From Aplysia californica (lineage: Eukaryota), in contig NW_004797413.1 in assembly GCF_000002075.1 (NCBI RefSeq), forward strand, positions 953,455-1,016,548: a stretch of DNA of 63,094 bases. Direction: 5' to 3'. The translations under genes and the position numbers were made by a program. Each line of letters starts with the position of its first letter. Position 1 is the first letter of the stretch. Below the pieces are notes generated by a model, which worked only from the letters and a program-made list of their open reading frames with translations, had not been told where the DNA came from and did not search any database. This document shows, in pieces, positions 8,852-24,300 of the stretch.

Positions 8852-11800
8852 TCAGTGTCTTCCTCCTCTGCCCCTCCCTCGACCTCTTCCTCCGCGGTGT
8901 CCTCCACCTCCTTGATAACCTCCTCCTCCTCCACCTCCTCCTCCTCCTTGATAACCTCCTCCTCCTCCACCTCCTTGATAGCCTCCTCCTCCTCCTTGAT
9001 ATCCCCCTCCCCCTCCTCCTTGATATCCCCCACCTCCCTGGTACCCANNNNNNNNNNNNNNNNNNNNNNNNNNNNNNNNNNNNNNNNNNNNNNNNNNNNN
9101 NNNNNNNNNNNNNNNNNNNNNNNNNNNNNNNNNNNNNNNNNNNNNNNNNNNNNNNNNNNNNNNNNNNNNNNNNNNNNNNNNNNNNNNNNNNNNNNNNNNN
9201 NNNNNNNNNNNNNNNNNNNNNNNNNNNNNNNNNNNNNNNNNNNNNNNNNNNNNNNNNNNNNNNNNNNNNNNNNNNNNNNNCCCCCTCCCTGATAACCCCC
9301 TCCTCCTCCACCTCCCTGGTAGCCCCCGCGGCCACCACCACGGAATCCTCCACCACCCCGACCTGCAACACAAGACAAGTAAAAAAAAATTAGAACTCAT
9401 GTCACTAACAGAATACACAACATTTTTTAAGTTTTACATGTAGCGGGTAGTAACAGTTTTTTTTAAAGTTTTTTTTTGGGGGGGGGGGGTGGCAAGTGTT
9501 TTATGGCCCTCGCAACTGCACAAGGTCATATGAGCGCGCAGGTTTTTGGTTGGGTTTTTTTCGGGGGGGGGTAAGGGTATTACAGCGCTCGCAACTGCAT
9601 AAGGTCATATGAGCACATGGGACACATCAAATATTTGTAGTAACAGTTTAACGGCACTTGCAACACAAATAAGAGTGTATGTCCAAATCACCGAAATGGT
9701 GTGTGTGTGTTTGTGTGTGTGTGGGGGGGGGGGGACTTAACAGACCCTCAATAAGGTACAAACTAGTAGAGACATCAGGGTCTTCAACATTTCAGCAATG
9801 CATACATATTATGTATAGCCTGCTAAAAACATTTGAATGGTAAACTTCCACAGTCACAAATTGTGAATGTTTAAGTACAGCATAAATTTCAAAGATGGTT
9901 ATCTTATCTGGATCAGCATTTCTGTTTAAGAAGGTTTAACTCTTAAATATACAGCAAACCTGCCAGTTCAGCCAGTTCACGACAATGTTCCATTGTTTAC
10001 TGGGGAAACAAACATTTACCAAACCCCAGCAATTTCTTGCTATCTAATATCAAACTGTATGTTTATTACTCAGGTCATTCATTTCCACTCAGTTTGGTGT
10101 TTAATTTATGCAAAGAGATTAAACAGGAGTGGAGTTATAGAGAAGTTTGTGATGCTGCAAACTTGGGACGACAAAACTGGCTGTGTACAAAGGAGAGATA
10201 GCCTATCGTATACGAAGAGTTAAAGCACAACATAAAGGCAGATATAACTCACCCCCAAGCCAGCATCTCTTCATGAAGCCTTAAAGTGCAAGAAAAAGAC
10301 AGAAAATAACTCACCCCCTGAGCTGGCATCTCTCTTCATGAAGCCTTAAAGTGCAAGAAAAAGACAGAAAATAACTCACTCCCTGAGCTGGCATCTCTCT
10401 ATGAAGAGAAGGCTTAAAGTACAAAAGACAGATGTATAACTCACCCCCAGAGCTGGCATCTCTCTTCATGAAGGCTTAAAGTACAAGAAATAGATCAGAT
10501 ATATAACTCACCCCCTGAGTTGGCATCTCTCTATGAAGAGTAGGCTTAAAGTACAAAACTAGAGAAGACATATAACTCACTCCCTCATCTGGCATCTCTC
10601 TAAGAAGAGAAAGTGTTAAGTACAAAACTAGAGAAGACATATAACTCACTCCCTCACCTGGCATCTCTCTAAGAAGAGAAAGTGTTAAGTACAAAACTAG
10701 AGAAGACATATATCTCACTCCCTGAGCTGGCATCTCTCTAAGAAGAGAAGGCTTAGAGTGCAAGAAAAAGACAGATGTAATACAACTCACCCCCCGAGCT
10801 GGCGTCTCTCTTCATGAAGGCTTAGAGTACAAAAGAAAGACAAGACATATAACTCACCCCCTGAGCTGGCGTCTCTCTTCATGAAGGCCGGCATCTCGGG
10901 TGGGGGAGGTTCCAGCTCCCAGGCACGCCCGCCTCTGTCTGGCACCTGGCGTCACAAAACACAATGGACAGTTAGTGACTTGTTTGTTTTAGTAGAGGTT
11001 TTACGGCGCTCGCAACTGCATAAGGTCATATGAGCGCCAGAAGATTAGAGGTGTTACAAGAGAGTAACAAACATAAAAAAGAAGAAGGGGAGATAAGGAC
11101 GATAGATGTTTGATAGGAAAGAAGAAGCAGACCAAACCAGAGCACCCGCCAACCACCCAGTTAGCGAGTTGATTTAGTTCAAATTTTAGTAAGAGTTTTA
11201 CAGCACTTGCTGAAGATTAGAGGTGTTACAAGAGAGTAACAAAGACAAAAAAGAAGGGAGAGATCAGGATGATAGATGTTTCATAGGAATGAAGGAGCAA
11301 ACCACACCAGAGTACCCGCCAACCACCCACATTTTCGTAACGTCCAACAACTTGTATTTCCAAGTGGGGCATAAGATAACACTTGTTATTACAAAATTAT
11401 CGAATTGCTCACTAGTGGACAATATTGCCCAGGTCAGTATGCTAGGCAGTAGACAAAGCACTTTCATATCATAATCCAACATTTGGGCACACTAAAAGTG
11501 GACCTTTTGACAAACTTACCCGGCCAATGAGAACTTTGTTTATTGCACATTTACTCCTCTCTCTCGCCTCTCCACTGCTCGTTTTCTGCAGTCTTGTTAA
11601 ATCTGAAAAAAATAAAATAGATGATGAAACTGCAATGTAGTCTAGGAGTAGGAGGGGGGGAAAAAAGCCAGTCACAGCAAGTATTACGAAGTTGGGAAGC
11701 ACAAACAGGAAGAAGCAACGCGTACATACAGTAGAGTCCACTTGAACCTAAATATGCTGGATCACCCGCTGTTTTATCTTCGGTTTATCCAGGTTTTCAG

Positions 11801-18936: not shown

Positions 18937-19219
18937 GCTAGCGGAGAGACTGCTTGAATGCGGGACAAACAATACCCAGAAAGGTTGGGGAGAGTATCAA
19001 AACTCTTGGCAGTGCTAGATCTATCAGTTTTTCACACAGCAGACCAATGTTGATCTGTTGGTGAGGAACCGATCCACTCCACCGGAAGTAGCATGTGGAA
19101 TAAAGCAAACCTGAAATTTGACCAATGAACAGGAGGCTGGAATTCACTGCGTTACTACGTTTCTAAATGTTCAACAAATCAAAACACAGTCAAACAGTTT
19201 GTCCGCATTAGTAAACAAG
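18937..19219. promoter_or_regulatory. Compact bidirectional promoter between FAM98 and PSMD8
   Basis: Only 283 bp separate the divergent ATGs; ETS/GABP motif CCGGAAGT at 19082-19089; CCAAT at 19044 and 19122; YY1-like AAGATGGC over the PSMD8 ATG. Confidence 0.8.
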
Positions 19220-21310
19220 ATGGCAGCCAACTTGAAAGAGATTGTCGGAGTGTACCAGAATCTCAAGCGAGTTTGGGATACAAAGCCGCCCAATCTTGAT
19301 AAAGCTGGCGAACTTCTTTCTAAGCTCAAGGTATCAATAAATATGTTCTGTATGGATCTAAAGATCCTGGTTAAAAATATGTGTTGTGTGTCCTTATGTC
19401 AAATGTATGAATGCCTTTTATACCCGTCAGAAACTCAAATTTGCCGTGTCACTTTCATTTTGTCTTTCAGTCTTCTTACGTTCATACTTCAGACTTAATT
19501 ATCGTTCTGATTTAAAATGTTACACCCAGAATGTCTAGATCTAGAAGATCGAGATATCTAGTTCTAGATCTAGCTGTAAACTAATGGAAGCGGCATTTAG
19601 AAAATAATAAGTAGTGCCCAGTGCCCTAACATAGCCACTGTGACTGTCACACTACCGTAGACTACCGCGTAGACTACAGACTAGACTCTAGTCTAGACTA
19701 CCCAGACTGGTGGTCGGCCAGTACTTCCTCCCACTATTATTACTGCTGTGTAGCCTACTTGCCTTCCACTTCAGTTTCTGTGTCAGTGCAAGTAGAAGAG
19801 TTCCAACCAATTTTTTTTTTAATTGCCTTCCTAGCTTTCACAGCTGGTCTAACAAATCCTGCCGTTAGTAGTAGAAACTCTGGCGATTTTGTAGTTTCGT
19901 TCTTTAAAGTCAAGAGAAGGGGGTTTCAGGGGGGCTTGACCTAATACAAATATGTAGGTGGGGGGTTCAGGGGGGCATGCCACCCTGAATTTTATACTAA
20001 TTTGATGTTTTGCAGTTAGGTTGCATCCCTACTCCCTTGTGTAGCCTAATTCGAATAGTATTTGGTCTTCAAGACTTCTTGATTTCTTCTCTGTATGTAA
20101 ACAAATGGATCGTGGACTTAAACGAACGGAACTACAAGATCACCGAAACTCTTTGTATAGAGGCTATTAACCCTCGGGTTTATATGTCACGCGATAAGCC
20201 TATTTCGGCACTATGCCTGCGTTCTGGTCCTGCGTCTGTCTAGCCCCTGGCTCAGCGCACACCTGCCGAGCACCATCTCCCCTTGCATTCGGGTCCTGAG
20301 TCGGATCCGCATTCACGTAGCTCAAGTGTGTGTGCGTCAGTCTGCTTGAGTTTGTCTGCGTTTGTGGCCTTCTTCTTGAACCGCCTTCGTAACTGAGGCA
20401 TACGTCTCATTCAAAACATGCCAAGTTGGTAGCTCTAGATGTTCGTCAAATGAAATTATAGAAGAAATTGGCCCACTTAGACATGAGGAGTTCAAAAGGA
20501 TATAGTCAGGAAATGAGCTTGATTTTGTATGAAATGATACTACCTGATAAAAAATAAGCTTATTTGATAATTTTGAATACCATTGTGCAGGTACAAAGAA
20601 CAATTTGAGTGCAGAACATTCGGAAATTGACCTATAGTGTCCCCTTTCGAACCCCAGGTCATTCATAACAACAAGAGCGTCTAGAAAGGTTATTCGAACG
20701 GGCTTAACTGCTCGTAATGTCTTATCAGCTTATGAGAGGGGGTTATTCATGTGTTTGTAACACTTTATAAATAGAAAGCTATGAAAGATAGAGCGTTATT
20801 TTCATCGTTGATTAACGCACTCCAACTGTATTCATGGCGAAACACACGTTTCCCGGCGCGCGCGTGGGCTGTACACCAACAGTACACACTGAGTGACCCC
20901 GGCGGCCCGCCCGGAACGTCCGACGTAATCGGTTGCTGATAAGATTCGCATCTCAGCACAGACGCAGGACAAGAGTTAATCCACCCTATCCTATAGCCTA
21001 CCATAATGGGAAGTGGCTATTTTCACCGGTGAGAATAAAAATATTATCGACTTCTCTCACCGGGTGAGACTTGCCAGCATTCGCTATTCTCCCCCGGTGA
21101 GAAACAAGACCTATTTTTCCTAATTACTCAATGCTTTCTATCGGTATGAATGATCAAATTGACCAAAAAAAACCCAAAAAATGATGTTTTATAGCACAAA
21201 AGTAAATTAATTTGGTCGTCTACAAAGATGCTACGGCTATTTCACTTTTCTAATCGAGGCGAACTTCACTGGTCACTTTTTCTTTTTGCCTGGAAGTTCT
21301 CGCTACTCCT

Positions 21311-21342
<32 letters not shown>

Positions 21343-24300
21343 NNNNNNNNNNNNNNNNNNNNNNNNNNNNNNNNNNNNNNNNNNNNNNNNNNNNNNNNNN
21401 NNNNNNNNNNNNNNNNNNNNNNNNNNNNNNNNNNNNNNNNNNTCTCTCTCTCTCACTGTCCCCTGACAAAATTGCATGCTTTCAGCCAAAAGGCTCGCCC
21501 TCTCGCCCTGAGTGATCGTCCGAGCCAATGCGCTCAGCGGGTGAGAATAGCCAAAAGGCTCGCCCTCTCACTCCGGGTGAGAGGCCTATAACTGCGCTAT
21601 TCTCACCCGGATGAGAATAGAGGTGGCCTTCATAATGATACTTGAGCGACAGCCTGGCTCATTCAAACCTTTATTATGATACTGGGAAATACAGTTTATA
21701 CACCAGTGGTTTAGATTCAACAAAGTCGCCAGGACTAGCCTTCAATTTAGTTTAATCTGGGTGTTTGTTAATAGCAAATGAGGTTTATGTATGTATTTTA
21801 TAATGTATTCGACTTTCTCAATCAAAAGCAGTTTGTTTTCAAATAAGAGGCATTTTCATTTCCTCTGATACCGAAGAAATGCCTGAAAGTTGCAGGAAAA
21901 TACATTGAACAGTAAACTCTACCAAACACACACTGCAAAAGGACTGATTCCTTCAAATGCACGCCTGTGTCATCCATCATCTATACTTATTGGTTGCCGA
22001 ACAAGTTATGTTGCTGTGTAGAGCCTAGCATACGGCTACGTTTAATTCCACAGTCCAGCCCGCAATTCATTCATAGATCTATGTCAAGATTAGCTTATAT
22101 CATATCAGAGGCTGGGGCAAAAAATAACTTGACGTGTTTGTATCTCCACTGACCTTCTACGTACGGACCTCTTGTACCCCCATCCCCCTAGACCATGGAG
22201 GCCAGATCGCCGGATTTTGCCGGCAAACCGGAATTTTGAACGGTCCGACCAAGCTTTACCGGAATCTCGCCGGCATCAATCGATTGCGATCATACCCCCG
22301 ACGGGGTGGACTTTGCGATTTTGTTCCGTATCTTGTGCTCCCGTCACATGGACGGGAACGGACTCCAGTGCTAGTTTTGCAACTTGTTTCATTTCATGCC
22401 GAGTTTGGCAGAAGTTGCATGGTAGCTTTTTAAGTAATTGAAGGTGAAGGACAGTCACTTCAACTGAGGTTGAACTGACCGGAACTTGCGTTATGGTTTT
22501 TTTTCTATACAGCTGATAGTAATTTGACAGTCACGTCGCGAAGTAACGGTCGAAGAAGTAGCATGAACAAGAATCATATATAATTTCGCTGTTTTCTATA
22601 CTTCTGTTCGTTTTACTAGATCAAGTTTTAGTGACTCAGAATATGATGTGTCTGATAGTTAGGATCCTGGATATGTGCCCGAGTCATAGTTTTAGGGCTA
22701 AATCTCGATCTAGCACTAGAAGATCTCTTGTACTGGTGTTATTGTTTGCGCAATATTGGTCCTGCCTCTGTAAAAATAAAGTGGGCTTTCACCATCGGTA
22801 TCCTGCTTTTGAAATTTGATTTTATTCCAATCTCTTCAAAAGTTGCAGTTGTTTTATAAGTACGTTTTGCTTTGTTTTGATACCTAGTGTCAGTGCCATG
22901 ATTGTGAGTTAAGAATCCCGTCTTTTCTCATTTTGTTCGGCATCAAGACAGAGTTTAATTTAGGTTCAGGCTTCACTTTGTTCTCTTCTTCCCATAAAGT
23001 AGGCTACTTGCATGTCTCAAAGATTCCCACTCGTGAGGACTGGGAACAAACATAGCTAAATCATCTCTCAATACCTAAACCGTTTGCCACATATTTCTTC
23101 TAATCCAGAAATTCTTTTTTGTACAAGATTTCAAGATGCTGTTGCAAATTTCAGTTCATTATGACTTTGTTCTAGTGTACTTGTAATTCATATATATCAT
23201 TATCATATAATATATTGCATTATTTCCGCTTTGAAGATTTTAATTGTAGAGAGGGAGTGGACTGAAAATATTGTTTGTCTTATTTGGATGGAAGTAGAAA
23301 TGAACACCCCTCTCTCCTATCCGCTGAATCTGATGGTATTAACTTCTTCTTCTACAGCTTGCTCTCACCAGTGTCGCCTTTTTACCCACAACAGAATCGA
23401 CTGTGTCAAAGCAAGAACTGCTTATTGCACGTAGGTGTTTCTATTTTGTCTTTGTTTCGTCTTCCTGCACTTTTGGCATGGTTGTATTCTGCTCCAATTT
23501 TTGTTTTAGGACATTTACTGCTTCAGAAACCTATTTGAAATTGTTGGCAACAATAAAAAAAAATTTTTTTTTTTTTTTAAATTAAAAAAAGAAGAAAAGC
23601 TAGTTTTGGGTCAGACCGTCAGATGTGAACATGATTATCATTGGAAAGATGATAAATTTATACTTTTTATGTGTATGTTACCTAAAGTGAAGGATATTTC
23701 GGTTTTGTGTTCCCACTGAGCAGAAGTGAAATTTATAATTGATATTTCTATGAATAACAGAAATTGCATCTTAAAGGCTATGTGTGGCCTTTTCAATGTA
23801 TAGTCGAACCTTTTCAAACAGCTACCTGTATAAACAATTACCTCTACAAATAGCCACTTTCCATTTCTTCCCTTGCATATTTTTATCTTAGACAGTTTCA
23901 ACTGTTTTATAGTTTCCTGGTTATATTTTTTATGTATTTTGGTAAAATAATTTTTTGGTTTATTTTTGTTTTGCAGGAGAGAATTTTTTTCTTAGACAGT
24001 TTCAACTGTGTATAGTTTCCTGATTTTATTTGTATGTATTTTGTTAAAGTAATTTTTTGTTTTGCAGGAGATATTCTGGAAATTGGTGCACAATGGGCGA
24101 TAGCGAAAAAAGATATTCCCGGCTTTGAGAGATACATGGCACAACTGAAATGTTACTACATGGATTACAAGTAAGTTCATTTTTGCTTTCATTCATTTCT
24201 TCTAAGCCTGCTATATGCAGTAGTTTGTTATCATCAAAACTGTTGCGTGTAGGGGCCCTCAGTACATAATTGTGCTGCTGCTACTGAGTTACAGAATGCT

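What the first reader, a model, noticed from the sequence alone, without database searches (positions are those of the whole stretch)
10220..10945. FAM98 intron 10 is an array of nine cloned micro-exon cassettes, most of length 3n
Seen: on the sense (minus) strand each 62-72 bp unit reads pyrimidine tract, AG, a copy of the last ~30 nt of exon 10, then a GTGAG donor. Cassettes at 10791-10820, 10445-10474 and 10315-10344 are exactly 30 nt, and 10253-10279 is 27 nt. All four are phase 1-1 and open in the FAM98 frame (A/G-FMKRDASSG; GFMKRCWLG). Cassettes at 10719-10751, 10512-10544 and 10380-10412 are 33 nt and carry an in-frame TAG just before the RGG/GYQ last exon. The two remaining units lack the AAG acceptor. 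Where two AAG-bearing cassettes are adjacent, donor and acceptor are only 32-39 nt apart. Inference: adjacent cassettes are too close to be spliced together, so the array could act as a sterically exclusive micro-exon bank that either lengthens the linker or removes the low-complexity tail/triggers NMD. It could equally be nine silent decoy donors. Caveats: the acceptors are weak AAG type, and the array may be a neutral minisatellite.
Basis: partly seen in the sequence, partly recalled or inferred. Interest (0 to 1): 0.78.

Follow-up and report, generated by a model that had tools for sequence, protein, structure and literature searches.

The report
Splice-junction minisatellite in sea-hare FAM98
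The end of one exon of the sea hare's FAM98 gene, together with its splice signal, has been copied nine more times into the following intron. This is a real repeat of an already described kind (a "mirage" minisatellite), and there is no sign so far that the copies are used as extra mini-exons.

Summary
A 62-72-bp unit made of the last 31 nt of FAM98 exon 10, its GTGAGT donor and about 37 nt of intron is repeated nine more times at the start of intron 10 (10253-10857, minus strand). The cassette lengths (30/33/30/33/30/27 nt), the in-frame TAGs and the 32-39-nt spacings are as described. The array is unique in the genome. It is reproduced by DNA contigs of a second individual and is absent from a distant mollusc's FAM98 locus.

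The functional reading (a sterically exclusive micro-exon bank) has no support:
- The AAG "acceptors" are by-products of the duplication junction. None of the gene's 10 real acceptors is AAG.
- Three cassettes carry stop codons.
- The 3n pattern comes from about three independent events.
- Heterobranch orthologues have a single FMKRDA motif.

The one RNA test allowed was uninformative, with zero depth on FAM98 exons 9-11 in three runs.

The array matches a known kind: amphioxus "mirages" and the human F7 intron-7 VNTR, whose extra donors stay silent. The scan has already found many such arrays elsewhere in this genome, including in the neighbouring presenilin gene. Verdict: an ordinary new member of a known kind, and low interest unless RNA data show cassette use.

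The parts
10858..10945 (-). FAM98 exon 10 (VPDRGGRAWELEPPPPEMPAFMKRDASSG, ending in phase 1). Its last 31 nt (10858-10888) are the source of the repeated exon-like segment.
   Evidence: (DUF2465 positions 277-301).
10852..10857 (-). Authentic 5' splice site GTGAGT of intron 10. It is the first of ten in-register copies.
   Evidence: The frame joins to the RGG exon at 9362.
10253..10857 (-). The mirage array: nine units of 62-72 bp, each made of donor + about 32-39 nt of pyrimidine-rich intron start + a copy of the exon end. It fills 605 of the 1495 nt of intron 10.
   Evidence: Unique in the genome. Present in X1 contigs.
10791..10820 (-). Copy 1 of the exon end, 30 nt, open (AFMKRDASSG). It lies only 37 nt from the authentic donor.
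10719..10751 (-). Copy 2, 33-nt type with an in-frame TAG. It also holds a pyrimidine tract + TAG acceptor-like site that would define a 19-nt piece (10719-10737).
10581..10718 (-). Copies 3 and 4, near-identical units without the AAG. Each has TTAAC + a 14/17 pyrimidine tract + TAG ahead of a 19-nt piece (10650-10668 and 10581-10599). There is an extra GTGAG at 10657.
10512..10544 (-). Copy 5, 33 nt with an in-frame TAG.
10445..10474 (-). Copy 6, 30 nt, open (AFMKRDASSG). It has two synonymous differences from the exon.
10380..10412 (-). Copy 7, 33 nt with an in-frame TAG.
10315..10344 (-). Copy 8, 30 nt, open (GFMKRDASSG).
10253..10279 (-). Copy 9, 27 nt, open but recoded (GFMKRCWLG). Two separate deletions (-2 and -1) sum to -3.
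10184..10252 (-). Last donor copy followed by the unduplicated continuation of the intron. It aligns with the units only as far as ...CTTTAAC, which marks the 3' breakpoint of the duplicated segment.
9281..9362 (-). Start of the last exon (RGG/GYQ tail), with its acceptor ttgcag at 9363-9368. The exon runs on into masked N, which was not filled.

Best explanation
This is a lineage-specific 'mirage' minisatellite.

Origin. A segment of about 68 bp spanning the exon-10/intron-10 boundary of the sea hare's FAM98 gene (31 nt of exon, the GTGAGT donor and about 37 nt of intron) was duplicated in tandem. It then expanded and diversified by slippage or unequal exchange into nine extra units.

Splicing. 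Because every extra unit lies downstream of the authentic donor, splicing from the first donor (10857) to the exon-11 acceptor (9362) removes the whole array with intron 10, and the protein is unchanged. The nine pseudo-donors and the junction-made AAG sites are most likely silent or used only at noise level, as in the human F7 intron-7 VNTR, where the most upstream of identical donors is selected.

Shown here: the anatomy, the origin from the exon end, uniqueness in the genome, presence in a second individual, absence from a distant mollusc, and a single motif in orthologous proteins.

Inferred, not shown: that the pseudo-sites are silent in RNA.
For: - Array anatomy, and a breakpoint that itself creates the AG.
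- Only one copy in the genome.
- The same sequence appears in contigs of another individual.
- Unit pairs range from near-identical (copies 3/4, and the intron parts of 8/9) to about 60% column identity in the pyrimidine tract, which is typical repeat turnover.
- No conserved block is specific to the donors: GTGAG and AGAGA are equally invariant.
- No unusual RNA fold, z = +1.3. No Rfam match.
- Stops in three cassettes.
- The gene's real acceptors are all YAG.
- Orthologues carry one F(M/T)KRDA motif followed directly by the RGG tail.
- A distant mollusc's genomic contig has a longer exon 10 and no repeat.
- Minisatellites are frequent here, about 15 arrays in 63 kb.
- The neighbouring presenilin gene has an acceptor-side array of the same kind.
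- Earlier notes of this scan report many such arrays in this genome.
- Literature: mirages in amphioxus do not disturb splicing (PMC3087553, PMC3902484). The F7 IVS7 pseudo-donors are functional but silent, and the most upstream site is chosen (PMC1557585).
Against: - No RNA read covering FAM98 exons 9-11 was obtained, so silence of the copies is an inference by analogy.
- The pseudo-donors are perfect GTGAGT sites, at least as strong as most real donors of this gene.
- The exon-like part is somewhat better conserved than the intron-like part (0.73 against 0.61 mean column identity).
- All AAG cassettes are 3n.
- Three of four independent substitutions in the open cassettes are synonymous.

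The last three are hints of constraint, or of gene conversion with the exon, and they are too weak to count.
Confidence: 0.75

Rival explanations
1. Leaky decoys. The array is a mirage in origin, but some pseudo-donors or copy 'exons' are used often enough to matter. Exon 10 extended to a later donor runs into TGA at 10787-10789. The 33-nt cassettes bring a TAG. The 19-nt pieces behind the pyrimidine-tract TAG sites shift the frame of the RGG tail. Any of these would lower FAM98 output through NMD, or delay removal of intron 10 as decoy exons do.
For: - There are ten consensus GTGAGT sites within 605 nt.
- Copies 2-5 and 7 have a canonical-looking acceptor: 12-14 of 17 pyrimidines followed by TAG, and a TTAAC branch-like motif in copies 3/4. 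Their mini-introns are 46-53 nt.
- The read-through ORF stops at 10787.
- The decoy-exon model is established in human cells (PMC6097662).
- In F7 the pseudo-sites are functional when the first site is disabled (PMC1557585).
Against: - There are no RNA data either way.
- In the documented analogues the copies stay silent (PMC1557585, PMC3087553, PMC3902484).
- An earlier follow-up on a similar TECR array in this genome reported only the normal message (not checked here).
- Such arrays are so common in this genome that each being regulatory is unlikely.
Confidence: 0.18
2. One of the open 27/30-nt cassettes is spliced in, at most one per transcript because neighbours are 32-39 nt apart. This would add an A/GFMKRDASSG linker repeat before the RGG tail. 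The 33-nt cassettes would serve as poison exons.
For: - All seven AAG cassettes are 3n and phase 1-1, and four are open.
- Three of four independent substitutions in the 30-nt copies are synonymous.
- Spacings are below the roughly 50-nt donor-to-branch-point limit used to call steric exclusion in human mutually exclusive exons (PMC5740500).
Against: - The AAG is a by-product of the duplication junction, and none of the gene's 10 real acceptors is AAG.
- The first cassette is itself only 37 nt from the authentic donor.
- The statistics are weak: p about 0.04 for the 3n pattern counted as three draws, and p about 0.11 for third-position bias. The open copies are also selected after the fact.
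- The 27-nt copy is recoded.
- Orthologues show no repeated motif.
- The array is absent from a distant mollusc.
- A mutually exclusive cluster requires one member in every mRNA, whereas here the default is none.
Confidence: 0.05
3. Assembly artefact: the array is a mis-assembled or collapsed/expanded repeat and is not present as such in the animal.
For: Tandem repeats are error-prone in draft assemblies. Copy number could not be checked with short contigs.
Against: Contigs of run X1 tile the array with zero differences at single-copy-like depth of about 54. X1 carries fixed differences from the reference at 10221 and 11509, so it is another individual.
Confidence: 0.02

Closest known systems
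Human F7 intron 7 (IVS7) 37-bp VNTR minisatellite (Borensztajn et al. 2006, PMC1557585)
   Same: The first repeat element spans the exon/intron boundary, so the authentic donor is followed by several identical pseudo-donors inside the intron. It is a donor-side array, like this one.
   Different: - The F7 unit is 37 bp and too short to hold an acceptor plus a mini-exon. The units here are 62-72 bp and carry junction-made AAG sites and, in five units, pyrimidine-tract TAG sites.
- Silence of the pseudo-sites was shown experimentally for F7 and is only inferred here.
- F7 is polymorphic in copy number. That was not tested here.
'Mirage' minisatellites of amphioxus (Adh3, globins BflGb6/9, troponin C, PGBD5; PMC3087553, PMC3902484)
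   Same: - They are minisatellite-like tandem duplications of an intron/exon boundary.
- Units are 10-160 bp at 81-100% identity.
- Many units keep AG/GT signals.
- They are reported not to disturb normal splicing.
- They show concerted evolution inside the cluster, with diverged edge units.
   Different: - This one is in a different phylum (a gastropod mollusc, not a cephalochordate).
- Haplotype length variation and somatic instability, shown for amphioxus, were not tested here.
[quoted passage not shown] 2011, PMC3265369; Lehmann et al. 2010, PMC2891723; De Grassi & Ciccarelli 2009, PMC2812944, which cites Zhuo et al. 2007)
   Same: A tandem duplication that includes splice signals creates extra usable-looking donors and acceptors in one step. 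Repeats at exon-intron boundaries can give alternative splicing.
   Different: In those cases the duplicated signals are used and a new intron or isoform results. Here no use is shown, and the copies sit wholly inside an existing intron.
Mutually exclusive exons enforced by steric hindrance (survey in PMC5740500)
   Same: Homologous neighbouring exon-like units have a donor-to-next-acceptor distance below about 50 nt.
   Different: - The default FAM98 message needs none of the units.
- Three units carry stops.
- The acceptors are non-canonical AAG.
- No transcript evidence exists.
Decoy exons that promote intron retention (Parra et al. 2018, PMC6097662)
   Same: These are non-coding exon-like elements with splice sites inside an intron of more than 1 kb. 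Their inclusion would trigger NMD.
   Different: Decoy exons are single and deeply conserved, and are shown to cause retention. This array is young, repeated and lineage-specific, with no RNA data.

Membership tests
Mirage / F7-IVS7-type splice-junction minisatellite | Head-to-tail tandem array of short units (tens of bp) | tested here: met
   TRF: period 69, 8.9 copies, 83% matches, score 599. Unit alignment.
Mirage / F7-IVS7-type splice-junction minisatellite | The first unit spans the authentic exon-intron boundary, so each unit repeats the exon end plus the splice site | tested here: met
   The last 31 nt of exon 10 + GTGAGT + about 37 nt of intron are repeated. There are ten in-register GTGAG.
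Mirage / F7-IVS7-type splice-junction minisatellite | Local origin, not a dispersed repeat or transposon | tested here: met
   The only match in the 927-Mb assembly is the array itself.
Mirage / F7-IVS7-type splice-junction minisatellite | Regular splicing is undisturbed and the pseudo-sites are silent | tested here: inconclusive
   Three polyA RNA runs gave zero depth on exons 9-11. Orthologues have a single motif.
Mirage / F7-IVS7-type splice-junction minisatellite | Copy-number instability or polymorphism | tested here: inconclusive
   X1 contigs match the reference units exactly, but short contigs cannot count copies.
Mutually exclusive exon cluster (steric type) | Donor of one exon too close to the branch point or acceptor of the next (under about 50 nt) | tested here: met
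   32-39 nt between a donor and the next AAG. Threshold from PMC5740500.
Mutually exclusive exon cluster (steric type) | Every member is a usable, frame-preserving coding exon | tested here: not met
   Three of seven AAG cassettes have an in-frame TAG, two units lack the AAG, and one is recoded.
Mutually exclusive exon cluster (steric type) | Exactly one member is included in each mature mRNA | not testable with these tools
   There was no RNA coverage. The exon 10 to exon 11 frame is intact with no member included, and orthologues have none.
Decoy exon (intron-retention type) | Intron retained in a share of transcripts, dependent on the decoy's splice sites | not testable with these tools
   No RNA coverage of the locus.
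FAM98 (Pfam DUF2465, PF10239) host gene | DUF2465 domain followed by a Gly/Arg-rich tail | tested here: met
   Five exon pieces hit PF10239 (E = 3.9e-25 to 8e-3) and cover profile positions 14-301. Eleven exons are colinear with mollusc FAM98A proteins. The RGG/GYQ last exon is seen.

The most novel reading that the evidence does not exclude
At least one of the open 30-nt copies, or a TAG-bearing copy, is really spliced into FAM98 mRNA in some tissue, at most one per transcript because neighbours are 32-39 nt apart. A young junction minisatellite would then be caught in the act of becoming a bank of alternative micro-exons or poison exons in front of the RGG tail. That would be a live example of exon birth from a 'mirage'.
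Probability: 0.06. Interest if true: 0.6.

Novelty: new member of a known kind. Interest (0 to 1): 0.22.

Why it matters
As a single locus it matters little. It is one more splice-junction minisatellite, of a kind described in amphioxus and in the human F7 gene, and this scan has already seen it many times in this genome.

Its value is as a clean natural test case. It offers ten identical consensus donors in a row, plus two kinds of acceptor-like site, next to a housekeeping gene. That makes it useful for asking how a mollusc spliceosome picks the first donor, and whether such arrays ever give rise to new exons. If cassette use were shown, it would document exon birth from a repeat. The abundance of these arrays in the sea hare, a non-chordate, also extends the known range of 'mirages'.

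Tried and rejected
1. RNA reads. Reads were laid on three raw polyA RNA runs plus one DNA-like run. The RNA runs covered only the high-copy repeats beside exon 10 (10961-11380 and 9449-9700), with zero depth on FAM98 exons. The many 'joints' between 9668 and about 11040/11208 have non-GT/AG ends and appear in the DNA run too. They are other genomic copies of those repeats, not splicing.

2. Transcript evidence through proteins. I made three word searches (exon-10 ORF, a bivalve FAM98A, and a close relative's mRNA product) and one exhaustive search to obtain a full-length handle. No protein of this species is returned; its own records appear to be withheld. So no isoform information was obtained.

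3. RNA structure. The array does not fold better than shuffles (z = +1.31), and there is no Rfam match. Rejected.

4. Dispersed repeat or transposon origin. Rejected.

5. Selection tests within the array. Column conservation, 3n counting and third-position bias are all too weak with nine related units and are confounded by shared descent.

6. I did not build a joined (spliced) protein model.

7. The masked N in exon 11 were left as they are.

Full report
**What is there**

The window is part of a 927-Mb assembly (contig C143).

A FAM98 gene lies on the minus strand from about 18936 to beyond 9281. Five exon pieces hit Pfam DUF2465. Eleven exons are colinear with mollusc FAM98A proteins. The flanks of the exons show the splice sites.

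Exon 10 (10945-10858) encodes VPDRGGRAWELEPPPPEMPAFMKRDASSG. It ends in phase 1 at a GTGAGT donor (G at 10857). Exon 11 starts at 9362 behind ttgcag and encodes the RGG/GYQ tail, which runs into masked N that I did not fill. Intron 10 is 1495 nt.

**The observation**

Tandem Repeats Finder gives one array at 10275-10878: period 69, 8.9 copies, 83% matches. A regular-expression scan finds ten in-register GTGAG donors and one extra.

Cutting the array donor to donor and aligning the units shows that each unit has three parts:
- the donor;
- about 32-39 nt of pyrimidine-rich intron start ending in ...CTTTAA;
- a copy of the last 31 nt of exon 10 (GCCTTCATGAAGAGAGACGCCAGCTCAGGGG).

- three 30-nt cassettes reading A/G-FMKRDASSG;
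- one 27-nt cassette reading GFMKRCWLG;
- three 33-nt cassettes with an in-frame TAG;
- two units without AAG;
- donor-to-AAG spacings of 32-39 nt.

The array has no other copy in the genome. Contigs of run X1 tile it without a single difference at a depth of about 54. X1 also carries fixed differences from the reference just outside the array (10221, 11509), so the array is real DNA in a second individual.

**How it arose**

The last unit's donor (10252) is followed by the unduplicated intron. That sequence aligns with the units only as far as ...GCTTTAAC. The duplicated segment therefore ran from 31 nt before the donor to about 37 nt after it.

The 'AAG acceptor' is simply the joint between the intron's ...TTTAA and the exon's G. 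It did not evolve as a splice site.

The units fall into two types:
- The 30-nt type is like the exon.
- The 33-nt type has a 5-nt TCTTC duplication and a 2-nt loss in the AGAGAGA run, which creates the TAG.

The 27-nt copy has two further deletions, of 2 nt and 1 nt. Copies 3 and 4 differ at two positions, and the intron parts of copies 8 and 9 are identical. The pyrimidine tract varies most, so turnover is continuing.

**Tests of the functional reading**

1. Acceptors. FAM98's ten real acceptors are nine CAG and one TAG, none AAG.

2. Coding constraint.
   - Three cassettes carry stops and one is recoded.
   - The 3n lengths go back to about three independent events (the breakpoint giving 30, the net +3, the net -3). 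By chance that is about 1/27, and 3n brings no benefit to cassettes with a stop.
   - In the three open 30-nt copies there are four independent substitutions, three of them at third codon positions. The binomial p is about 0.11, and these copies were chosen because they are open.

3. Conservation. Mean column identity is 0.96 for GTGAGT, 0.73 for the exon-like part and 0.61 for the rest. The invariant runs GTGAG and AGAGA are equally long. The variable part is an indel-prone T/C tract. Nothing singles out the splice signals.

4. RNA structure. There is none beyond shuffles (z = +1.31), and there is no Rfam family.

5. Relatives.
   - The Elysia, Physella and Biomphalaria FAM98A proteins, and an mRNA contig of a closer relative (P0172, L006), have one F(M/T)KRDA motif and then the Gly/Arg tail or an alternative end. 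None has a repeated motif.
   - A genomic contig of a more distant mollusc (L002) has a longer exon 10 ending at a GTAAGC donor and no tandem repeat in the next 1 kb.
   - So the array is lineage-specific.

6. RNA.
   - The only read-laying run allowed went to three raw polyA RNA runs. They gave zero depth on exons 9, 10 and 11 and on the array.
   - The reads that did map belong to a young high-copy interspersed repeat next to exon 10 (at least 1051 candidate copies at 95-99% identity).
   - This test is therefore uninformative, and it is not evidence that the copies are silent.
   - Proteins of this species could not be retrieved from the protein collection.

The five 33-nt-type units, including the two set aside for lacking AAG, carry a much more canonical acceptor-like site. 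It has 12-14 pyrimidines in 17 followed by TAG. In copies 3 and 4 it is preceded by TTAAC.

This site lies 46-53 nt from the previous donor and 19 nt before the next donor. If it were ever used, it would give frame-shifting 19-nt pieces. This is read from the sequence only.

Exon 10 extended to any later donor meets TGA at 10787-10789.

**Comparison with what is known**

Tandem repeats that start on an exon-intron boundary and fill the adjoining intron with copies of the splice site are described in several places:
- 'Mirages' occur in amphioxus Adh3, globin, troponin C and PGBD5 genes, and normal splicing is reported unaffected (PMC3087553, PMC3902484).
- The human F7 gene has a 37-bp VNTR whose first element spans the exon 7-IVS7 boundary. 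Its pseudo-donors are functional but silent because the most upstream site is selected (PMC1557585).
- Repeats at boundaries can also create new introns or isoforms (PMC2812944, PMC2891723, PMC3265369).

The FAM98 array meets the structural criteria of this kind. The behavioural criteria (silent copies, length polymorphism) could not be tested.

It fails a defining feature of a mutually exclusive exon cluster, because not all members are usable coding exons. It does meet the spacing criterion (under 50 nt, PMC5740500). Decoy-exon behaviour (PMC6097662) cannot be judged without RNA.

**Context in this genome**

Minisatellites are frequent here, about 15 arrays in 63 kb.

The neighbouring presenilin gene, about 17 kb before the window, has an acceptor-side array of tttccccag plus the first bases of the exon. 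I checked this directly (L007 3202-4121). A partial copy of that exon's end also lies just after its donor.

The scan's notes list 27 findings of 'decoy splice' arrays in this genome. Several follow-ups reached the 'mirage' reading. One, on TECR, had in-frame cassette-like copies and reported only the normal message in RNA assemblies (I did not recheck those claims).

The commonness of the pattern favours a mutational explanation over a locus-specific function.

**Verdict**

The array is a real, well-described structure. It is most likely a neutral junction minisatellite removed with intron 10 (confidence about 0.75). Low-level or regulated use of the decoys is the main rival (about 0.18). The micro-exon bank is unlikely (about 0.05).

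It is a new member of a known kind, and its interest is low to modest. The decisive experiment is junction-level RNA evidence across exon 10 to exon 11.

Noticed in passing
window 10961-11380 and 9449-9700 (core about 10980-11140): A young, very high-copy interspersed repeat (SINE-like) lies about 35 nt upstream of the exon-10 acceptor, with related pieces inside intron 10. The own-genome search gave at least 1051 candidate copies, and the 40 other copies scored are 95-99% identical. It is abundantly present in polyA RNA runs with poly-A/T loose ends, and it has no Rfam match. It explains all RNA reads and 'joints' seen.
   Followed up: partly
L007 3202-4121 (G000:C143, about 17 kb before the window start): The neighbouring presenilin gene has an acceptor-side array of the same kind. 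It holds about 14-20 units of 39-45 bp (higher-order periods of 93 and 110 bp), each with tttcc(c/g)cag plus the first bases of the exon, ending at the real exon (CCTGTACACCCCGTTCCACGAC...).
   Followed up: partly
L007 4285-4335: Just downstream of that presenilin exon's donor there is a partial copy of the exon's end (ctcctgcccctctacaagtatgagtgctacaa). It is a single-copy junction echo on the donor side.
   Followed up: no
window 10581-10737 (units 2-4) and 10380-10398, 10512-10530: The 33-nt-type units contain a canonical-looking acceptor (pyrimidine tract + TAG, with TTAAC upstream in two units). It would define 19-nt frame-shifting micro-exons with 46-53-nt mini-introns.
   Followed up: partly
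L006 1100-1160 (mRNA contig of a related gastropod, protein P0172): In a close relative's transcript the FAM98 reading frame leaves the usual path after ...SFMKRDAGG. It ends in ARSMPRLPQKRKRV*, a short basic tail that looks like a nuclear localisation signal, instead of the RGG tail. This could be an alternative last exon or a retained intron.
   Followed up: no
window 19118-24200 (+ strand): A gene that looks, from memory, like proteasome subunit PSMD8 lies head-to-head with FAM98 (ORFs [38 protein letters not shown]... and ...[24 protein letters not shown]). From memory, human FAM98C and PSMD8 are also neighbours, so the linkage may be ancient. Neither point was tested here.
   Followed up: no
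L002 1508-1690: In a more distant mollusc, exon 10 of FAM98 is longer. It runs on into the first RGG repeats before its donor (…AFKQRHPDGGGVTQRGGRGGGGDGRYGNRGGVQGGTSG|gtaagc). The position of intron 10 therefore differs between mollusc lineages.
   Followed up: no
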